Below, piece after piece: positions 14,140 to 52,665 of a stretch of 64,000 nucleotides of DNA. How positions within the stretch are numbered: the stretch's first letter is position 1; every line of letters begins with the position of its first letter. Source of the stretch: Malacoraja senta (lineage: Eukaryota). The notes under the pieces are model-generated. The model ran no database searches and was not told where the DNA came from. It saw nothing but the letters and a program-made list of their open reading frames with translations. The DNA is taken from the NCBI GenBank assembly GCA_038087875.1, contig CM075984.1, positions 25,916,001-25,980,000 of the forward strand. The letters are read 5' to 3'. The translations under genes and the position numbers were made by a program.

Positions 14140-16490
14140 ATTGCTTGTGATATATGAATAACATGGAAGGAAATATTGGTGGGCTGATTTGTAAGTTTGC
14201 AAATGATGCAAGAATTGGAAGAATTGTGAATAGTGTGGAAGGTTGTCAAAGGATGCAGCAAGATATAGATCAGTTGGACGTATGGGTGGGGAAATGACTG
14301 ATGGAGTTTAATCTGGGCAGGTGTGAGATGTTGCACTTTGGCAGGTCAAATGTGAATGGAGAGAACACAGTTATTTGAAAGACCCGAGGGAGTATTGATA
14401 TGCAGAGGGATCGGAGTGCAAATCCATAGCAAGTCCTTAAAAGTGGCAACACAAGTAGATGGGTGGTGAGGAAGACATGTGGCTTGCTTGCCTCCTCGTT
14501 GAGTATAAAAGTTGGGAAGTCATTGGAGCTATGAAACTTTGGTCAGGCCACATTTGGAGTATTGTGTTAAGGTCTGGTTGCTACATTACAGGATATTGCC
14601 TGGAATGGAGGGGCCTGGCTTTGGAGAGGTTGCAGAAGAGGTTCACCGGGATACTGCCTGGTTGGAGAGGTTGGGTAAACTCGGATTGTTTTCTCTGGAG
14701 TGTCCAGGGTTGAGGGCCGAACTGATACAGTGTATAACAATATGAGAGGCATAGAAAGGGTTGATAGACAGTTTTGATCCCAGGCTGGATATGACAAAAA
14801 TGAGAGGGCATAAATTGAGGGCGAGAGGGGGAAAATTTAAAGGAGATTAACAAGGCAATTGATGCATTCAGAAAGTATTCAGACCCCTTCACTTTTTCCA
14901 CATTTTGTTGCAGCCTTATTCTAAAATGGATTACATTATTATTATTTTTTTTAATCATCTATCTACACACAATACCCCACAATAACTGAAATATCACATT
15001 TACATAAGTATTCAGACCCTTTACTCAGTACTTTGTTGAGGCACCTTTGGCAGCGATTACAGCCTCAAGTTTTCTTGGGTTTGACACTATAAGCTTGGCA
15101 CACCTGTATTTGGGTAATTTCTCCCATTCATCTCTGCAGATCCACAAGCTCTGTCAGGTTGGATGGGCAGCGTTGATTCACAGCTATTTTCAGGACCCTC
15201 CAGAGATATTCGATCGGGTTTAAGTCCGGGCTCTGGCTGGGCCACTCAAGGACATTCACAGACTTGTCACAAAGCCACTCTTGTGTTGTCTTGGCTGTGT
15301 GCTTAGGGCCGTTGTCCTGTTGGTAGGTGAACCTCCGCCCCAGTCTGAGGCCCAGAACACTCTGGAGCAGGCTTTCATCAAGAATCTCTCTTCAATCCTG
15401 ACTAGTCTCCCAGTTCCTGCCACTGAAAAATGATGCTGCCACCACCATGCTTCACCGTAGGTATGGTATTGGCCAGGTGATGAGCGGTGCCTGGTTTCCT
15501 CCAGACGTGACGCTTGCCATTCATGCCGAAGAGTTCAATCTTGGTTTCATCAGACGAGAGAATCTCCTTTAGGTGCCTTTTGGCAAACTCCAAGCGGGCT
15601 GTCATGTGCCTTTTACTGAGGAGTGGCTTCCGTCTGGCCATTCTACCATAAAGACCTGATTGGTGGAGTGCTGCAGATGTAGATGTCCTTCTGGAAGGTT
15701 CTCCCATCTCCACAGAGGAACTCTGGAGCTCTGTCAGAGTGACCATCGGGTTCTTGGTCACCTCCCTGACCAAGGCCCTTCTCCCCCGATTGCTCAGTTT
15801 GGCCGGGCAGCCAACTCTATGAAGAGTCCTGGTGGTTCCGAAGTTCTTCCATTTAAGAATGACGGAGGCCACTGTGCTCTTTGGGACCTGCAATGCTTTA
15901 TACCCTTCGCCAGATCTGTGTCTCGACACAATCCTGTCTTGGAGGTCTACGGACAATTCCTTCTTCTTCATGGCTTGGTTTTTGCTCTGACATGCACTGT
16001 CAACTGTGGGACCTTATATAGACAGGTGTGTGCGTTTACAAATCATGTCCAATCAATTTAATTTACCACTGGTGGATTCCAATCAAGTTGTTGAAACATC
16101 TCAAGGATAATCAATGGAAACAGGATGAACCTAAGCTCAATTTTGAGCGTCATAGCAGAGGGTCTGAATACTTATGTAAATGTGATATTTCAGTTATTTC
16201 TTTTTAATTACTTTGCAAAAATTTCTAAACACCTGTTTTCGCTTCTTCATTCTGGGGCATTGTGCGTAGATTGAATCCATTTTAAAATAAGGCTGTAACA
16301 TAACAAAACGTGGAAAAAGCGAAGGGGTCTGAATACTTTCTGAATGCACTGTAGATGGACATGGGAACATGCAGGGAATGGAGGGGTGTAGACCACGTTC
16401 AAGCAGATGGGATTAGATTCAATTTGGTATCATAGGTCAGCACAGACACGATGGGCCAAATGGCCTGTTCCTACGCTCTACTGCTTTACT
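14140..16490 (+). mobile_element. Old CR1 RT/3' fragment interrupted by a Tc1 element
   Basis: Degenerate KFANDA, LVRPHLEYCV and LERLQKRFT motifs at 14140-14860. The 3' UTR resumes at 16352. Confidence 0.75.
14863..16351 (-). mobile_element. Near full-length Tc1/mariner transposon (IR/DR type), defective transposase
   Basis: ORF 15402-15971 has a paired-like HTH, ARRKPLL, SDETKIELFG and TVKHGGGSI, then frameshifts and deletions. TIRs TGCATTCAGAAAGTATTCAGACCCC at both ends, right end CACTG|TA, inner direct repeats near 15001 and 16160. Confidence 0.95.
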
Positions 16491-21228: not shown

Positions 21229-21936
21229 CAGGGGCGGAAATCCCGAGGGGGACAGGGGGGGCACGTACCCCCCTGTTTTGAGAGGTGGGGGACGATTCCC
21301 CCCCCCATTTTATGTAATCCGGATTTTAAAACTCGGTGAAAAAAAAAGCTGTTAAAAATCTCCGCTTTCCGCGAGACAGTGGGGGTGGGGCTGATGATCG
21401 AGGGCGCCGATTGGACGAGAGAGACGTCGGTCAGCAGGCAGTGGAGGGTGTGGGGGACCATGATGATTCAGCGCGGTGATTGGAGGAGGGAGGTGTCGGT
21501 CAGAGGCAGAAGTAGGGGGGTGGGACTGAAGATAGAGCGCGGTGATTGGAGGAGGGAGACGTCCTGGCGGAGCAAAGATCAGAGCGGAGCTTGAATCGGC
21601 TCGTTCGCGGGGCCGGCCCGGCGCAGCTTAAAATCGGCCGCGGGGTCTTCCACCGCCCCGTGGTCAAATTGCTGCGTCGATGCGATCGAGGCTCCCGATG
21701 TTGAAGCCCCCGCCGGGCGATGAAAGGCCCCGCGAACGGGTTGATTGAAGCCCCTCGATTCGGGGCAGATGAAGCTGCTGTTGCTGGAGTTTGGAGTCGG
21801 TTACCAACCAGGTCACTTACCGATGTTACCGTCCACAGGGCCCACGGCCGAAACCTTGTGTGTGTGCGCATGCGCGCGCGCGGGCCGCCAAGAAACTGTC
21901 CCCCCCCCCATGTTTTAACAGCGATTTCCGTGCCTG
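21229..21936. mobile_element. hAT-type non-autonomous DNA transposon (copy 1)
   Basis: TIRs CAGGGGCGGAAATC / GATTTCCGTGCCTG. 8-bp TSD TAGAAAAT / TAGAAATT. Homologous to 50200-50924. Confidence 0.88.
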
Positions 21937-32887: not shown

Positions 32888-33369
32888 CCATCTCTCCCCC
32901 TCTCCCTCCCTGCTCCCCCTCTCTGAAACTTACCTGTTTTACACTTTAATTCTGCCCTCACCCTTTCTCTGTCTTTCTCATTATATCTCTTTCTGTTTCT
33001 AATTCTGTCCACCACTCTCATAGTCACACTTTGTCTCTCGCTTTTTCTCTCTTCTATTAGGCTCTATCTCTCTGTTTCTCCTAGTCTCACTCTTATCTTC
33101 CTTTATCTCTGCCTCCAATACCATTTCTTTCTCTGTCTCTCTCTGACAGGTAATGTTTTGAAGAATTCTCAATGTGGGCGATTTATCGCCTGTCTCGTAG
33201 CCTTATCTTGTGCTTCAGTTTAACCCCCATATGACTGATGCACTTCCTGAAAGGTTAAACTGTCAAAAAAAATCTGTCTTCCACCTCCACAGTCTCCGAA
33301 GGAACAATTTCTTACAAAGTGCGCGTTTGAAGAATATTCTGGTTGGGCTGTGCAGAAATTTCCATTTCT

Positions 33370-33870
33370 AAAAGAAGGACTTGCCTCAACCTCAGCAACC
33401 TCAGGACGACCCAAATGATTCATAGCGAATTAAATACCTTTTGAAGTGCAGTCACAAATGTAATGTGCAAAACGTAGCAGGCAGCTTGAGCATTGCAAGT
33501 TCCACTAAACTCCAGTCCAATGAACCATATAATCTGTACTCCTTATCCTGGTTGGGAAATAAATATTGCCCAGAATAACACTACACTCCCCCACCATAGT
33601 TTTTTCTCTCTGTTTTTCTTCCTCCTTTCTGATCCTTTCTTTTACTGTGAAATGTCAAATTGAGAGAGCAGGTGGGATCTTGATGTACTGCTGCACTCCA
33701 GATCTTAATACCCATGACAATAAACTAAACTAAACTAAACCAAAGCTTCCATGCCCCACAGCATAGTGCAGCGCTCCCTCAGTCCTGCGCCTTTGGCAGA
33801 GCAACATCAACCGTGTTGTTGCTGCACTGGGCTATCAGCTGGAACTTGTGCTCAAACTGATCTCTATCTG
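33370..33870 (-). mobile_element. Old SINE remnant, DeuSINE (SacSINE1/AmnSINE)-like
   Basis: Degenerate ACTTTTGAAGTGTAGTCAC-, AATAAATATTGCCCAG- and GTGCAGCGCTCCCTCAGT-like blocks. Family name is from recall only. Confidence 0.4.
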
Positions 33871-34199
33871 TGACCTAATGCCCCTGTCCCACTTAGGAGA
33901 CCTGAACGGAAACCTCTGGAGACCTTGCGCCCCACCCAAGGTTTCCGTGAGATTCCCGGAGGTTTCCGTGAGGTTCCCAGAGGTTTTGGTCACTCTCCCT
34001 AATGGTCGAAAGTGGTTTCCGCGTAGTCGAGGCTTCTATGTTCCTGCGATTATTTCAACAAAACCAAAAGCGGCCTCGACTAAAAATAGGTTGCCGTTTG
34101 GTTGAAGCCAGTGGAGTGGGGTTGCTATTTACTTACAGGCAGTCGAAGGCAATCTCCTTCGCTGACCGGCCATTTTGATTGGCTCATTGGAGTTTTCAG

Positions 34200-34221
34200 C
34201 AAAGATCCTGTAGGATCTTTG
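34200..34221. mobile_element. 22-bp palindromic micro-insertion with 8-bp TSD (hAT-like ends), copy 1
   Basis: GTTTTCAG[CAAAGATCCTGTAGGATCTTTG]GTTTTCAG. Confidence 0.8.
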
Positions 34222-34558
34222 GTTTTCAGGACCTAGAAGATCCGCTGGAAGGTAAAATGCCCGCTAACTTTATTAAACTTCTTAAAACTGTCTCCACTCC
34301 TTCTCCCCCCCTTCTCTCCCCTTCTCCCCCCTTCTCTCTCCTCTTCTCTCCCTTTCTCTCTCCCCTTCTCTTCCCCTTCTCTCTCCCTTTCTCTGTCCTT
34401 CTCTCCCCTTCTTTCCCCTTCTCTCCCTCCCTCTAAAGGACTTACAGTGTTCTGTGGCAGCCGTTTACCTTCCTCTTCATCGCGCAGACAGCGCTCCTCT
34501 GCTGTCCCTGGCCCCCACCTTCGCGATGTGTTTGTGTGTGTGTGTGTGCAGTCGGTAG

Positions 34559-34580
34559 CAAAGATCCTGTAGGATCTTTG
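34559..34580. mobile_element. 22-bp palindromic micro-insertion with 8-bp TSD (hAT-like ends), copy 2
   Basis: GTCGGTAG[CAAAGATCCTGTAGGATCTTTG]GTCAGTAG. Confidence 0.8.
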
Positions 34581-34720
34581 GTCAGTAGATGCAGCTCACG
34601 CATCGGTCAAGGCTTTCCAGGCAAGTGACCAAAACCCCTGGCGACTCATGGAAACCTTGGGTGGGGCGCAAGGTCCCCAGAGGTTTCCGTTCAGGTTTCC
34701 TAAGTGGGACAGGGGCATAA

Positions 34721-34858
34721 GTGAGTCTGAAGAAGGGTCTCGTCCCAAAACGTCACCCATTCCTTCTCTCCAGAGAAGCTGCCTGTCCCGCTGAGTTACT
34801 CCAGCAATTTGTGTCTATCTTTGGTGTAAACGAGCATCTGCAGTTCCTTCCTACACTG
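34721..34858 (+). mobile_element. Solo Penelope-like pLTR with mutated hammerhead motif
   Basis: CTGAAGAAGGGTCTCGTCCCAAAACGTC followed by the pLTR body. GTGACCTAA duplicated at 33870-33878 and 34859-34867. Confidence 0.8.
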
Positions 34859-37784
34859 GTGACCTAACTGGGTAAAATGCTATCATCACCCCCTCCTCAG
34901 GCAATTTCACATGCTGATTACATTGCAATGATTTAATGGGTTATTTACCATCCTGCTTAAAGTTGAGAATGTGAATGTTCTCGGCCAGTGCAGTAGTCTC
35001 AGTAAATTACACCTAGAAGAATCAGCACCTGCAGATGCTTGGTGCTTTGACATCACCAGGTTTTGTGCAGCAATAATGATAAATTGAACAATTTTCTTTT
35101 ACCATCATTTTCTGTGGAAATGGAACATTGAGTTCTCTTCTAATTTTGATTCCTGACTTACACTGTGTGCTACTCTTCATTTAACTCTAGTTGTTTGTAA
35201 GATGCTAACACTGGGCTCGATGCTCTGAGAGAGTTCTGCACCTTCACTGGGAAATCTTCGGCAAGTATCGGAGAAGCAGCGGAGAGTCTGTCAGGAGTGA
35301 GTCCCCAATTTTAAATCCTTTCTCACTGAGTAACTTTGATCTCGGTAACACTTGTAGTAACTCCTGGCCCACTATCCAGGAATGATGTTAGTAATAGCAG
35401 ATACCAGCCAACACACTCAGAGATCATTCATTTGTTGCGGAATGAGGAGCATCACGGACAGGACTATAGTTGTAGGCTCTCTGAGTAGAGAGCCTAGATG
35501 TTGTTGGAGCTACTCCAAAACCCTTGGTTTTGTGAACAACAAGACAGAGAATCTCAGAGAAAGGGAGGGAATTATAACTGTGCAAAGTTTTATAGGATAT
35601 CATTTGCAGCGATACAGTTGGAACTAATAACTGCAGATGAAGGGAATCTGAAGCAAAAGCAGGTAGTGGGAGTGTTCAACAAGTCTGGCAGCATGTGTGG
35701 GCAGTCTGCGCATGTTTGGACCTTTGTCAGAACTGGAAATGTGAGGAGGCTAGAGTTTTACTTTGCAGAGAGGGCTGGGTGGAGAGGACAGGGAGTGTCT
35801 GAACTGCTGTGCAGTTAAGCTGTCAAGGTAACAATTACTTTAAAACTGGCAAATGAAACAAACATAATACAGAAACAAAAGTACCAGCATATCTGTGAAA
35901 AAGAGGGATTTACCTGAAATTAATAAACTCGGTATTATTTTGAATCAAAGATTTCCTAAAAAAAAACAAGTACTGGAGGAACTCAGTAGATCAGGCAGCA
36001 TCTGTGGAGGGAACCTTCTTCAGAGTGAGACGTCCCAACCTGAAACATCATTTGTCATTCCTTCCAAAGATGCTGCCTGACCCATTTGAGTTCCTCCAGT
36101 ACTAAGCTTTTTACTCAATATTCCAGCATCTGCAGTCTCTTTTGCCTCAAAACTTCCCTACTGTTACACTCCATACCCTTTGCAATAAAGGCAAACTTTC
36201 CATTTGTCTTCCAGGTTACTTGCCGTGCCTGCATGCTGTGTGAATAACCTCACATATTCCTACGTTATATTCCAGCTGACAACTTCTTGCCCACTCACAT
36301 AACCTATCTATATCTTTTTGCTGGCTCAATGTGTCCCTTTAGAACTTGCTAGTCCTTATATCTTCCCTCTTCAGCAAGTCTGGCTACAGTATATTAGCTT
36401 TCTTCATCCAAGTCAATAATAAGGATTGGAAATGGTGGACTGATCCTTGCGGCACTCCACTGGTTACTGTTTGTCAATTGAAAGTGACACATTTATCTCG
36501 ACTTTCTGTTTCCTGTCAGTTCGTCAATCCCCTTTCCAGGCCAGTATATTATCTCAAACACGTATACTGTCATGCTGTCAAAAACTATCTTGGCACCTTG
36601 TCAACATTCTTTTGGGAATCCAAATACACCACATCTACTGCTTCCCTTTATCTATCCTGTTCACTGAACTCAAAAACAAGTGTCCAATGCACTGTCTCTT
36701 TCATAAAACCACGTTGGCCTTGCTTTATTGGCTCATGTTTTTTAAATGTCCTGCTGTTGCTTCCGAGACTCCTGAATTTTCCCAATGACAGGCTTTAGCT
36801 AACTACATGTAGTTTCCTGATTTCTTTCCGCCTCCCTTCTTGAATAGTAGCATTACGGTTGCAGTTTTACGGCCCAGGTGCTCGTCTAAACACTTCTTAA
36901 ATGCTGTCAGTGAACCAGCTTTTGGGTGTGAAAAAAACACAAAGTACTGGAAGAACTCAGCGGGTCAGGCAGCATCTGTGGAGGGAATGGACAGACGGCG
37001 TTTTGGCTTGGGCCCCTTCTTCAGATTGCATGTGAAAGTAGGGGATGTGTTCAATTCAGTTTTAGTTTATTGTCACATGTACCGAGGTACAGTGAAAAGC
37101 TTTTGTTGCATGCTAACTAGTCAGCGGAAAGACAATACATGATTACAGTCGAGTCATTAACAGTGTAGAGATACAAAATAAGGGAATAACATTTAATGCA
37201 AGATAAAGCCAGTAAAGTACGATCAAAGATAGTCCGAGGGTTACCAATGAGGTAGATAGTAGTTCAGGACTGCTCTTTAGTTGCGGTAGGATGGTTCAGT
37301 TGATGAACAATGGTTGCAGTGTGGATAGTGAGGAGCATAGCCTCTGGCTGCAACACAACATCATGAACTGGTAAGGAAAGCAGAAAAAAGGTAGATGGAA
37401 TTTATTCCTGAAAAATGTTTTGAATGTTTGAGTTCCTCGGTGTCGAGTGGCAGCAGATCTTAGATTGTATTCCTTCTCCACAGAGCCTCTGCGTTTGCTG
37501 CACCATGCCTCGGTGCATCCCTCAGTGCAGCTCCTGCAGCGAATGCAAGGAAATGGGATCAGTTTAGATGATGGCCAGAACAGACAGTTGTCTGAAGGGC
37601 CTGTCTGTACTGTATGAGTCTATATGACAGTGGTGTGTGGTCACATTGAACTGCCGTGGTCCTGTGGTGAGGTTGCTACCTCCATGCTCCTGAGGAGAGA
37701 ATTCCAGCAATGATAAAGGCCCAATGTTATTTTTCCAGTCTGGATAATGAGTAACCTGGAGGGAACCAGAAGGTGATAGTTCTT

Positions 37785-44379: not shown

Positions 44380-45370
44380 GGGTTGGGGTGCGATGCGCAG
44401 AGGGGATGGGGTGGGTGATGGGCAGAGGGGATGGGGTGGGTGATGGGCAGAGGGGATGGGGTGGGTGATGGGGTGGGTGATGGGCAGAGGGGATGGGGTG
44501 GGTGATGGGCAGAGGGGATGGGGTGGGTGATGGGGTGGGTGATGGGCAGAGGGGATGGGGTGGGTGATGGGCAGAGGGGATGGGGTGCGATGGGCAGAGG
44601 GGATGGGGTGCGATGGACAGGGGTCTGGGTGGGGGTGAAGGGATTGGGGTCTCCGTGGGTAGTTTTGGTGGGTGGTTGGGGAGTCGTGGTGGACGGAAGG
44701 GTCGGGGATCTTGGCACATGGAGGGGACTCTGGTACCTTGGTGGGCGGAAGGGGTTGGGAGTCTCGGTGGAAGAAGCGGGCTGGGGATTGAGTGTACGGA
44801 GTGGATTGAGGTGCCTGGTGGACAGTGGGTTGGGGCTGGGGATTGGTGAGCCAGGATAGGTGGCGGTGTTCGGGGTTCTCAGTGGACAGTGGTGTCTGGG
44901 GGCCTCAGTGGGTGGAGAGGGTTGTGGGTCTCAGTGGGGAGTGGAGGGAGGGGGTCTTGGTGGGCAGAGGGGAGTCTGGGTGGACGGAGGGGGTTGGTAG
45001 TCTCGGTGGGCGGAGGAGTTGTCGGTGGGCAGAATGGGATGGGGGTCAATGGGCGGATTAGGTCTTGGTGGGCGGTGTGGCTGGTGGTCTTGATGGGCAA
45101 AGGGGCTCGGTGGGCAAAAGGGTTGGGGCTCTAGGGAGATGAGGGGGTTGGGGATCTCAGGTGATGGAGGGTGTTTACATCTCTGTGGACAAATGGGGCT
45201 GTTAGTCTTGGTAGGCAGAGTAGAATGATGATCTCTGGACTGAGGAGGTTGAAGATTATTGTGAGTGGACGAGTTGAGGATCTTTGTGGGCTCACAGGTT
45301 GGGGATCTCTGTGGGTGCACAGGTTGGGGGTGTCTGTGGGTGAGTGGGTTGAGGGTCTCTGGGTGAGTCG
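44380..45370 (+). repeat. G-rich minisatellite (25-bp GATGGGCAGAGGGGATGGGGTGGGT) grading into a degenerate G-rich tract
   Basis: Near-perfect units at about 44395-44620, decayed units beyond. Confidence 0.9.
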
Positions 45371-45700
45371 CAATAGACAATAGGTGCAGGAGTATTTGGC
45401 CCTTCGAGCCAGCACCGCCATTCACTGTGATCAAGGCTGATCATCCCCAATCAGTATCCCGTTCCTGCCTTCTCCCCATATCCCCTGACTCTGCTACTTT
45501 TAAGAGCCCTATCTAGCTGAAAACCTGCCTCCACCACCCTCTGAGGCAGAGAATTCCACAGACTCACCACTCTCTGTGAGAAAAAGTGTTTCCTCGTCTC
45601 CGTTCTAAATGGCTTATTCCTTATTCTTAAACTGTGGCCCCTGGTTCTGGACTCCCCCAACATCGGGAACATGTTTCCTGCCTCTAGCGTGTACAAGCCC
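45371..45700 (-). mobile_element. Young CR1 LINE 3' end
   Basis: ORF 45451-45696 plus the (GTCTATT)n-type tail. Confidence 0.9.
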
Positions 45701-46053
45701 TAACAAGTGGGTTGAGGGTCTCTGGGTGCGTGGGTTCGGGGCCTCTGTGGGTGCGTGGGTTGAGGATCTTTGAGCGCGATGCAAATTGATTGCTGACAGT
45801 GACCATGCTTCATAGTTCTGATAGTCATGCTTCATCTTTACGTAATCTTATTTGTTGTGATGTACTTTGGGGCTTCCCAAGGTTGTGCAAAACGGCCTAA
45901 CATTATTTGTTTATTTTTCTCTTATGTATTTGAAGCTGCTTTCCTCATGCATGGTATATGCTGCAATTTATCACTAATCCTACAGTTACGCACTTTTGAG
46001 TTTTGAACAAGGTCAATATATGTTGGAAATTGGTTTTCACTTTTTCTTTCCAG

Positions 46054-50199: not shown

Positions 50200-50924
50200 C
50201 ATGGGCGGAAATCCTGGGGGGGGGGGGGGGGCATGTCCCCCCCCCAAGTTTTGAGATGGGGGACAATCCCCCCCCATCCCATGTTTTGTAATCCGAATTT
50301 TAAAACTCGGTGGAAAAAAAAATCTATTAAAAATCTCCGCTTTCCGTGAGACAGTGGGGGTGGGACTGATGATCGAGGGTGCCGATTGGACGAGAGTGAC
50401 GTCGGTCAGCATGCAGTGGGGGGGGGGGGAGGACATGATGATTCAGCGCGATGATTGGAGGAGGGAGGTGTCGGTCAGAGGTGGAAATAGGGGGGGTGGG
50501 ACTGAGGATCGAGCGCGGTGATTGGAGGATGGAGGTGTCCTGGTGGAGCAAAGATCACAGAGCGGAGCTTGAATCTGCCCGTTCGCGGGGCTTTTCATCG
50601 CCCGGCGTGGCTTAAAATCGGCCGTGGGATCTTTCACCGCTGTCAAGTTGCTGCGTCGAGGTGATCGAGGCTCCCGATGTTGAAGCCCCCGCCAGGCAAT
50701 GAAAGGCCCCGCAAACGGGCCGATTGAAGCCCCACGATTCGGGGCGGACGGAGCTACTGTTGCTGGAGTTAGGAGTCACCAACCAGGTCAGCTCCCGATG
50801 TTACCGTACACATGGTCCACGGCTGAAGCCTCCAAAGCCTTGCTTGCCTGTGTGTGCGCATGCTGACCGCCGTCTCTAAGAAATTGTGTGTCCCACCATG
50901 TTTTGATAGCGATTTCTGCCCCTG
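50200..50924. mobile_element. hAT-type non-autonomous DNA transposon (copy 2)
   Basis: TIRs CATGGGCGGAAATC / GATTTCTGCCCCTG. Perfect 8-bp TSD TTACAGGC at 50192-50199 and 50925-50932. Confidence 0.9.
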
Positions 50925-52049: not shown

Positions 52050-52665
52050 CCTTTATAACAAGAGGAGTTGAGTATTTGAGCAAAGAGGTCTATCTGCAGT
52101 TGTATAAGGCCCTAGTGAGACCACACCTGGCGTATTGTGGTCCCCTAATTTGAGGAAGGACATTCTTACTATTGAGGGAGTGCAGCATAGGTTTACAAGG
52201 TTAATTCCCGGGATGGCGGGACTGTCATATGCTGAGAGAATGGAGCGGCTGGGCTTGTATACTCTGGATTTAGAAGGATGAGAGGGGATCTTATTGAAAC
52301 ATAAGATTATTAAGGGTTTGGACACGCTAGAGGCAGGAAACATGTTCCCAATGTTGGGGGAATCCAAAACCAGGGGCCACAGTTTAAGAATAAGGCATAA
52401 GCCATTTAGAATGGAGATGAGGAAACACTTTTTCTCTCAGAGAGTTGTGAGTCTGTGGACTTCTCTGCCTCAGAGGGTGGTGGAGGCCAGTTCTCTGGAT
52501 ACTTTCAAGAGTGAGCTAGATTGGGCTCTTAAAGATAGTGGAGTCAGGGGATATAGGGAGAAGGCAGAAACGGGGTACTGATTGGGGATGATCAGCCATG
52601 ATCACGTTGAATGGTGGTGCTGGCTTGAAGTGCCGAATGGCCTACTCCTGCACCTATTGTCTATC
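52050..52665 (+). mobile_element. Young CR1 LINE 3' end
   Basis: ORF 52294-52581 and the conserved tail ending CCTATTGTCTAT. Confidence 0.9.

What the first reader, a model, noticed from the sequence alone, without database searches (positions are those of the whole stretch)
34192..34588. Two identical 22-bp palindromic micro-transposons, each with its own 8-bp TSD
Seen: CAAAGATCCT-GT-AGGATCTTTG at 34200-34221, flanked by GTTTTCAG/GTTTTCAG, and at 34559-34580, flanked by GTCGGTAG/GTCAGTAG. Different TSDs indicate two independent insertions, and both targets fit GTnnnnAG. Established: 8-bp TSDs and YARNG termini (CAAAG fits) are hAT hallmarks. Inference: the element is nothing but two 10-bp TIRs, which seems too short for normal in-cis synapsis of both ends. 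That implies either an unusual mobilisation route (ends paired from two molecules, or hairpin insertion) or a reproducible collapse of a longer palindromic MITE. Both copies sit inside a Harbinger MITE and may hitch-hike with it.
Basis: partly seen in the sequence, partly recalled or inferred. Interest (0 to 1): 0.75.

Follow-up and report, generated by a model that had tools for sequence, protein, structure and literature searches.

The report
Two transposon excision scars inside MITE
Two identical 22-base palindromes, each between its own 8-base target duplication, are real and are most likely scars left where a larger cut-and-paste transposon landed and later left, not tiny transposons; a high-copy Harbinger-type element then copied them around this skate genome.

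Summary
CAAAGATCCTGTAGGATCTTTG lies at 34200-34221 (flanks GTTTTCAG/GTTTTCAG) and at 34559-34580 (flanks GTCGGTAG/GTCAGTAG). Shuffles give no such match. These are the only TIR-only objects with 8-bp duplications in the 64 kb. Both sit in an 839-bp, non-coding, high-copy TIR element with a TAA/TAA duplication, a PIF/Harbinger-type MITE.

Each site records a separate 8-bp-staggered integration. The 22-mer is probably not mobile itself: it has no interior and its two ends cannot be paired in cis. I read both as in-situ scars of a larger element. The scar shape (both duplications kept, 10-11 terminal bases of each end between them) is what a long staggered cut of the Drosophila P-element type predicts, and not what hAT excision predicts. 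The hAT label is not established, because GTnnnnA also fits the P target consensus GTCCGGAC.

Short-read contigs from two skate species span site 1, and one spans site 2, in diverged copies of the MITE. So the scars predate amplification of a MITE subfamily and ride with it. No parent element or transposase was found.

Earlier notes of this scan report similar 12-46-bp scars with 8-bp duplications elsewhere in this genome.

The parts
33876..33878 (.). TAA, left copy of the host element's 3-bp target duplication
   Evidence: Read directly; the inverted-repeat arms run through it (I1).
33879..34717 (.). Host element: 839-bp non-coding TIR element, a PIF/Harbinger-type MITE, high copy
   Evidence: Ends TGCCCCTGTCCCAC...GTGGGACAGGGGCA. 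TIRs of 77 nt at 95% to 91 nt at 89%. No ORF longer than 85 aa. Summed contig depth 1e5-6e5 against about 30 for single-copy flanks.
34718..34720 (.). TAA, right copy of the host element's target duplication
   Evidence: Read directly.
34192..34199 (.). Site 1, left 8-bp target duplication GTTTTCAG
34200..34221 (.). Site 1, 22-bp palindrome CAAAGATCCT-GT-AGGATCTTTG: two 10-11-nt transposon tips, tips outward
   Evidence: I15.
34222..34229 (.). Site 1, right 8-bp target duplication GTTTTCAG
34291..34434 (.). CT-rich microsatellite-like stretch between the two scars, inside the host element
   Evidence: families D1 and D2.
34551..34558 (.). Site 2, left 8-bp target duplication GTCGGTAG
34559..34580 (.). 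Site 2, the same 22-bp palindrome in the same orientation
   Evidence: I16, D4.
34581..34588 (.). Site 2, right 8-bp target duplication GTCAGTAG (one CpG-type change from the left copy)

Best explanation
Proposed history:
1. A larger cut-and-paste DNA transposon with ends beginning CAAAGATCCT(G/GT) made 8-bp target duplications.
2. It inserted twice, 337 bp apart, into a master copy of a Harbinger-type MITE. This could be one element hopping locally or two visits of the same family.
3. It excised both times.

Why the scar looks like this: the transposase cut one strand at the element tip and the other strand roughly 10-17 nt inside the terminal inverted repeat, as the Drosophila P-element transposase does with its 17-nt stagger. 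Each flank therefore kept its target duplication plus a single-stranded tail made of the transposon tip. End joining of the two tails gave duplication + about 11 nt of the left tip + about 11 nt of the right tip + duplication. Because the cut position is fixed, the same 22-bp product can arise at independent sites.

The 22-mers are inert scars. The MITE subfamily that carried them later amplified and spread them.

Shown: two integrations with separate 8-bp duplications; tips-only content; location inside the MITE; presence of the same blocks in diverged MITE copies.

Inferred: excision, the staggered cut, the P-type enzyme, and local hopping.
For: Anatomy:
- Both objects are duplication / 10-bp tip / GT / 10-bp tip / duplication, with different duplications. 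These are two integration events, not a copied segment.
- Among the characterised cut-and-paste transposases I know of, only P makes a cut long enough to leave 10 or more nt per side: a 17-nt stagger inside the TIR (PMC7776569, PMC2577343).
- From my own knowledge, Drosophila P excision products commonly keep both 8-bp duplications and 4-18 nt of each end (Staveley et al. 1995; Beall and Rio 1997).

Target and size:
- P elements make 8-bp duplications, and their target consensus GTCCGGAC shares G1, T2 and A7 with both sites here (PMC2577343).
- Vertebrate P-like elements with 8-bp duplications exist and can be excised by zebrafish THAP9 (PMC10983969).

Local hopping is documented for P (PMC7776569) and would explain two scars 337 bp apart.

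Mobility: the 22-mer has no interior, so it cannot be a normal substrate.

Age and hitch-hiking:
- Contigs about 10% diverged from this copy cross the site-1 block without gaps, in X1 (records 4-7) and X19 (record 13).
- One contig contains site 2 (X20, record 28).
- One duplication has a CpG-type change.
- So the scars are old and are copied passively with the MITE.
Against: - No parent element with CAAAGATCC ends is in the window, and none in a 20.6-kb sample of a skate genome.
- No P or hAT transposase domain was found in any window ORF of 110 aa or more.
- The termini do not resemble Drosophila P or zebrafish Pdre2 (CATACCTGTCAAC, PMC10983969) beyond CA.
- T2/A7 and the CAAAG tip fit hAT at least as well.
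- Laboratory P footprints are heterogeneous, so two identical 22-bp products require a dominant repair outcome.
- The retained length is 10-12 nt per side, not 17.
- Excision itself is not observed. No orthologous or paralogous site with a full element was seen.
- Only one empty-like variant was seen (joint 34195 to 34230 with CTC between). It could also be a secondary deletion between the two 8-bp repeats.
Confidence: 0.5

Rival explanations
1. In-situ collapse of a hAT (or other 8-bp-duplication) element by abortive gap repair. After excision, or a break inside the element, both broken ends copy the element's tips from the sister chromatid. The new strands anneal as soon as they can, for example because the TIR itself carries the short inverted repeat ATCCT..AGGAT. 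Everything is deleted except about 11 nt per side. The remnant is inert, as in the best explanation; only the enzyme family and the repair route differ.
For: - 8-bp duplications with T at position 2 and A at position 7 in both sites, and a CAAAG tip, fit the hAT rules NTNNNNAN and YARNG (PMC3878927).
- hAT elements also hop locally (own knowledge of Ac/Ds).
- If the TIR reads CAAAGATCCTGTAGGAT, a 12-nt self-complementary stretch would force the same 22-bp junction every time. This is my inference from the sequence.
- Deletion derivatives formed by abortive gap repair are well documented for Ds and for mariner MITEs (own knowledge; PMC3814204 title and abstract).
Against: - hAT excision puts hairpins on the flanking DNA and leaves 'a random footprint' without transposon tips (PMC3878927).
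- Abortive gap repair usually gives variable junctions and much larger derivatives.
- The internal-palindrome TIR is hypothetical, because no parent was seen.
Confidence: 0.25
2. One reading: the 22-bp palindrome is itself a mobile micro-MITE. A hAT-like transposase moves it in trans by an unusual route, either pairing ends from two molecules or inserting a hairpin form.
For: - Two copies identical in all 22 positions, including the asymmetric GT centre, each with its own 8-bp duplication. Identity is what a mobile unit predicts most simply.
- An untested lead: earlier notes of this scan list another pair of identical 22-bp hairpins with 8-bp duplications elsewhere in this genome (s1-197977). 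That pair may simply be another copy of the same MITE.
Against: - Two ends 2 bp apart cannot be brought into one synaptic complex on stiff duplex DNA.
- There are no subterminal binding sites.
- Cut-and-paste movement of a 22-mer has no precedent that I know of; from my own knowledge, the shortest described MITEs are about 50-80 bp.
- There are only two copies in 64 kb, both inside one MITE.
- None is in 20.6 kb of another skate locus.
- The blocks are shared by diverged MITE paralogues, so their spread is explained by the MITE.
Confidence: 0.1
3. Not transposon-derived: chance palindromes, a library or assembly artefact, or hairpin-templated filler inserted at two staggered breaks.
For: - Short palindromes do occur by chance. 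One 24-bp palindrome without a clean duplication lies at 35473-35496.
- The single match in public metagenome contigs is a chance hit inside a bacterial coding region, with no duplication.
Against: - 0 matches in 100 shuffles and 0 such objects in 5 shuffled windows.
- The same 22-mer occurs twice, with 8/8 and 7/8 flanking repeats.
- The block is present in independent short-read contigs of two organisms.
Confidence: 0.03

Closest known systems
Drosophila P-element excision footprints (17-nt staggered donor cleavage followed by end joining)
   Same: Both copies of an 8-bp target duplication are kept. Between them lie only the terminal nucleotides of the two inverted repeats, tips outward, forming a short near-palindrome. 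The target shares G1, T2 and A7 with the P consensus GTCCGGAC. Close spacing fits local hopping.
   Different: The tips (CAAAGATCCT) are unrelated to Drosophila P or zebrafish Pdre2. About 11 nt per side is retained rather than up to 17. The scars are fixed in a germline and amplified inside another transposon, rather than recovered from a laboratory excision. No P/THAP9-type transposase or parent element has been linked to them.
hAT superfamily non-autonomous elements and hAT excision footprints
   Same: 8-bp duplication, NTNNNNAN target pattern, a terminal motif fitting YARNG, and short TIRs.
   Different: hAT footprints come from hairpins on the flanking DNA and do not keep transposon tips. 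hAT MITEs have interiors and subterminal sites and are tens to hundreds of bp long. Here there is nothing but two 10-bp tips.
Tc1/mariner canonical footprints (for example C(A/T)GTA for Sleeping Beauty)
   Same: The same logic applies: a fixed staggered cut leaves a reproducible piece of each transposon end between the target duplications.
   Different: Those leave 2-3 nt per end and a TA duplication. Here it is 10-11 nt per end and an 8-bp duplication.
PIF/Harbinger MITEs (Tourist-like), for the host element
   Same: TAA/TAA duplication, long TIRs, no coding capacity, thousands of copies.
   Different: This subfamily carries two foreign scars as passengers. No autonomous Harbinger partner was examined.

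Membership tests
hAT non-autonomous element (MITE) | 8-bp target site duplication | tested here: met
   8/8 at site 1 and 7/8 at site 2. The feature is shared with the P superfamily and others.
hAT non-autonomous element (MITE) | Target pattern NTNNNNAN | tested here: met
   GTTTTCAG and GTCGGTAG both have T2 and A7. There are only two sites, and the P consensus GTCCGGAC has the same T2/A7 (PMC2577343), so this does not discriminate.
hAT non-autonomous element (MITE) | Interior with subterminal transposase-binding sequence that allows both ends to be paired | tested here: not met
   The whole object is 10 + 2 + 10 bp.
hAT non-autonomous element (MITE) | An autonomous partner with the same ends that encodes a BED / hAT-dimerisation transposase | not testable with these tools
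   None in the window. The genome could not be searched.
hAT non-autonomous element (MITE) | Many copies in unrelated contexts, each with its own duplication | tested here: inconclusive
   Two copies, both in one MITE. None in L002. Public collections do not hold this genome.
P-type (long staggered cut) excision footprint | Both copies of the 8-bp duplication retained | tested here: met
P-type (long staggered cut) excision footprint | Between the duplications only the terminal nucleotides of both TIRs, at most the stagger length (17 nt in Drosophila) per side, tips outward | tested here: met
   10-11 nt per side, with the CAAAG tips next to the duplications. Stagger length from PMC7776569.
P-type (long staggered cut) excision footprint | A parent element with the same ends that encodes a THAP / P-type transposase | not testable with these tools
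Not in the window.
P-type (long staggered cut) excision footprint | Evidence of a former occupant: an orthologous or paralogous site that is full or empty | tested here: inconclusive
   One empty-like paralogous variant (34195 to 34230 with CTC between, table 5c). No site with a full element was seen.
PIF/Harbinger MITE (host element) | 3-bp TAA/TTA duplication, TIRs, non-coding, high copy | tested here: met
   TAA/TAA. TIRs of 77-91 nt at 89-95%. No ORF longer than 85 aa. Depth 1e5-6e5 against about 30.

The most novel reading that the evidence does not exclude
The 22-bp palindrome is a genuine mobile unit, by far the smallest cut-and-paste element known. It consists only of two abutting 10-bp ends and is mobilised by a route that does not need both ends of one molecule to be paired, such as ends from two copies or insertion of a hairpin or cruciform form.
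Probability: 0.1. Interest if true: 0.85.

Novelty: new member of a known kind. Interest (0 to 1): 0.4.

Why it matters
If the scar reading is right, these 22-mers are fossil evidence that a cut-and-paste family with a long staggered cut, a property known only from P elements, was active in the germline of skates. P-type transposition in vertebrates is otherwise known mainly from zebrafish Pdre elements and the domesticated THAP9 gene.

Scars of fixed shape record the enzyme's cut position without any biochemistry. They also give exact terminal sequences with which to find the parent family.

The case also shows one transposon's scars being multiplied by another transposon. Such multiplied scars can be mistaken for a new ultra-small mobile element in repeat annotation.

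Tried and rejected
- Exact 22-mer scans of public collections. Viral contigs gave 0 and prokaryotic genomes gave 0. Metagenome contigs gave one hit, inside a bacterial coding region with no duplication, so a chance match.
- Reaching other MITE copies through predicted proteins. The 44-aa ORF across site 1 found no candidate, so MITE ORFs of this genome are not in that collection.
- Sampling skate DNA through a Tc1 transposase ORF. It gave one skate protein, P0102 from Rhinoraja longicauda. Its 20.6-kb locus L002 holds the window's SINE family but no host-MITE copy, no CAAAGATCC and no TIR-only object. I ran no further search on more such loci. About 20 kb per look-up against roughly one MITE copy per 150-600 kb made a useful yield unlikely.
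- Looking for a parent element in the window. Pairing all near-matches to the tip with 8-bp flank tests gave only chance-level pairs.
- A 6.6-kb 'element' with a 14-bp TIR and an AACATGTT flank turned out to lie inside about 310-nt inverted repeats. It is not related.
- Reading the shared 26-mer (AG + 22-mer + GT) as a 26-bp element. Rejected because the flanks then do not form direct repeats in register.
- Reading the SINE-tail joints 33736-33744 to 34724 as proof of a 983-bp insertion. Rejected because the matched sides are only about 22-28 nt of low-complexity tail.
- Site 2 in reads. The tool masks the (GT)n run at 34521-34558, so nothing could be laid across it.

Full report
**1. Observation**

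The sequence is as described. CAAAGATCCTGTAGGATCTTTG lies at 34200-34221 and at 34559-34580, both in the same orientation. 100 dinucleotide-preserving shuffles of the window gave no match even with 3 mismatches.

The flanks are GTTTTCAG/GTTTTCAG (34192-34199 and 34222-34229; 8/8) and GTCGGTAG/GTCAGTAG (34551-34558 and 34581-34588; 7/8). The one difference is CG versus CA, the usual decay of a methylated CpG, so the right-hand copy has probably mutated.

The repeat finder reports a shared 26-mer, AG + 22-mer + GT (D4). That is because both duplications begin GT and end AG. Reading the object as a 26-bp element leaves flanks that are not direct repeats in register, so the 8-bp duplication is the correct reading.

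I scanned the whole window for short palindromes (10-90 bp, terminal arms of at least 6) flanked by direct repeats of 6-10 bp. The scan returned exactly these two at 8 bp. It returned nothing at 7, 9 or 10 bp, one weak case at 6 bp, and nothing in five shuffled windows.

**2. Surroundings**

Both objects lie inside an 839-bp element at 33879-34717.
- Its ends are TGCCCCTGTCCCAC...GTGGGACAGGGGCA.
- Its inverted repeats are 77 nt at 95% to 91 nt at 89%.
- It has TAA on both sides and no ORF above 85 aa.
- This is the anatomy of a PIF/Harbinger-type MITE.

Laying Logan contigs of four public runs on 33000-35600 shows single-copy flanks at depth about 30 in the best-matching run. Summed depth across the element is 1e5-6e5, which means thousands of copies. 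Directly to the right, at about 34724-34860, lies a far more abundant SINE-like repeat.

Runs X19 and X20 (one organism) hold about 0.8 of the sampled words. Runs of other organisms hold about 0.4, and the contigs of two of them (X1, X2) differ from the window at a few percent of positions in the unique flanks (table 3). These are therefore close relatives.

A Tc1 transposase ORF in the window led to one annotated skate protein (Rhinoraja longicauda). Its 20.6-kb locus carries the same SINE family. Earlier notes of this scan also call this genome a skate.

**3. Are the palindromes private to this copy?**

No.
- Contigs about 10% diverged from this copy, and therefore other copies of the MITE, align without any gap from left of site 1 to right of it. 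In organism A these are X1 records 4-7, for example 34172-34294 with 11 mismatches. In the window's own species it is X19 record 13, 34191-34309 (table 8).
- With at most 13 mismatches over 119-137 aligned bases and no gap, a block of the same 30-bp length must be present in those copies.
- For site 2, one contig (X20 record 28) aligns from 34559 to 34704 and runs 40 nt further left into the masked (GT)n.
- One class of contigs joins 34195 to 34230 with CTC in between (table 5c, X19). This is an empty-like variant of site 1 in a more diverged subfamily, but it could also be a secondary deletion between the two 8-bp repeats.

So the two objects were acquired by a progenitor of a MITE subfamily and have since been copied passively. 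The tables are truncated, so the proportions of filled and empty copies cannot be given.

**4. What the objects are**

Two different duplications mean two integration events by an enzyme that makes 8-bp staggered target cuts. What lies between the duplications is only the two tips of an element, tips outward, with no interior.

Such an object cannot be a normal substrate:
- The two ends are 2 bp apart on stiff duplex DNA, so they cannot be brought into one synaptic complex.
- There is no room for subterminal binding sites.

The simplest history is that a larger element sat at each site and left.

[quoted passage not shown] Tc1/mariner elements leave 2-3 nt per end.

The P-element transposase is the only characterised cut-and-paste enzyme I know of that cuts far enough inside its inverted repeat, 17 nt (PMC7776569, PMC2577343). 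Each flank then keeps a long tail of transposon tip. From my own knowledge (Staveley et al. 1995; Beall and Rio 1997), Drosophila P excision products commonly keep both 8-bp duplications and 4-18 nt of each end.

The objects here have that shape, with 10-12 nt per side. A fixed cut position also explains how two independent events can give the same product. For example, 11 + 11 nt could be joined end to end. Alternatively, 12 + 12 nt could overlap by the terminal GT with G-T wobble pairs, which after replication gives GT or AC, the same 22-mer in either orientation. These junction models are inference.

P elements also hop locally (PMC7776569), which would account for two scars 337 bp apart.

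**5. hAT or P?**

- The P target consensus is ATR-GTCCGGAC-WAT (PMC2577343). G1, T2 and A7 therefore fit P as well as hAT (NTNNNNAN).
- Neither family predicts G at position 8.
- The tips resemble neither Drosophila P nor zebrafish Pdre2 (CATACCTGTCAAC, PMC10983969).
- The window holds no longer element with these ends.
- No hAT or P transposase domain occurs in any ORF of 110 aa or more. The only hits were Tc1/Sleeping Beauty HTH, a reverse transcriptase and an endonuclease fragment.

The superfamily is therefore open. The scar's shape favours a long staggered cut.

The main rival keeps the in-situ remnant reading but invokes a hAT element collapsed by abortive gap repair. That would be reproducible only if the TIR carries a self-complementary stretch such as ATCCT..AGGAT.

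**6. Rivals and odds**

| Reading | Odds |
|---|---|
| P-type scars | 0.5 |
| hAT or other element collapsed in situ by gap repair | 0.25 |
| Genuinely mobile 22-mer | 0.1 |
| Non-transposon origin or artefact | 0.03 |

The first two together make the 22-mer an inert remnant at about 0.75.

The identity of the two copies is the best argument for mobility. The physical impossibility of cis synapsis, the absence of any copy outside this MITE in the DNA I could see, and the sharing of the blocks by MITE paralogues argue against it.

**7. What could not be done**

The genome itself is not in any searchable collection here.
- The 22-mer is absent from viral and prokaryotic collections.
- Its one metagenome match is a chance hit in a bacterial gene.
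- MITE ORFs are not in the protein collection.

No listed contig of the exact locus crosses either palindrome, so raw-read confirmation of this very copy is also open.

**8. Earlier notes of this scan**

These are AI notes, untested by me. After I had written down the footprint reading, a word search showed that other windows of this genome carry 12-46-bp palindromic inserts with 8-bp duplications. Those were read as P-type excision scars, with the parent never found.
- One note (s1-197977) describes two identical 22-bp hairpins, each with its own 8-bp duplication, in a 348-base stretch. That may be another copy of this MITE subfamily.
- Another note (s1-206920) reports a fragment of a P-like THAP exon in this genome.

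These agree with my reading but are not independent evidence.

**9. Verdict**

The interpretation as hAT micro-transposons is only partly right. The objects mark two real integration events and do ride on the MITE. But they are best read as inert excision scars of an unidentified 8-bp-duplication transposon, probably one with a P-like long staggered cut.

This is a new member of a known kind. Interest is moderate: naturally fixed scars of this type in a vertebrate are, as far as I know, undescribed, and they give a direct handle on the parent family and its cut position.

Noticed in passing
window 34724-34860 (and the tail-like (AAACT)n at about 33716-33745): SINE-like repeat directly right of the host MITE, with summed contig depth about 4.5e7 against about 30 for single-copy DNA in all four runs laid. 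It is by far the most abundant repeat in the stretch. The same family (85-91% identity) occurs several times in the Rhinoraja longicauda locus L002.
   Followed up: partly
window 35473-35496: 24-bp palindrome TAGGCTCTCT-GAGT-AGAGAGCCTA in single-copy DNA. Its flanks show only a 5/6 match (AGTTGT/AGATGT) and no clean 8-bp duplication. It could be an old decayed scar of another family or chance; about 0.6 hairpins of this size are expected per window.
   Followed up: partly
window 45394-45701 and 52313-52638: Two copies of a repeat of about 310 nt in inverted orientation (88-92% complementary), enclosing about 6.6 kb. A perfect 14-bp 'TIR' with an AACATGTT flank found by my scan lies inside these arms and is not an element boundary.
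   Followed up: partly
window 15405-15971 (-): 189-aa ORF with Sleeping Beauty-type HTH and Tc3 HTH domains (E 1e-20), the N-terminal part of a Tc1-like transposase. Its closest database proteins are 68-84% identical and are mostly from ray-finned fishes and bichirs, with one from a skate.
   Followed up: partly
window 21513-21632 and 50489-50608: Two copies of a repeat sharing ...GGGGGTGGGACTGA[AG]GAT.GAGCGCGGTGATTGGAGGA...CAAAGATCA... Their CAAAGATC is unrelated to the 22-mer.
   Followed up: no
window 45278-45330 and around 45764: Tandem-like units GG(G)ATCTCTGTGGGTGCACAGGTTG. Their GGATCTTTG matches are part of this array and are not transposon ends.
   Followed up: no
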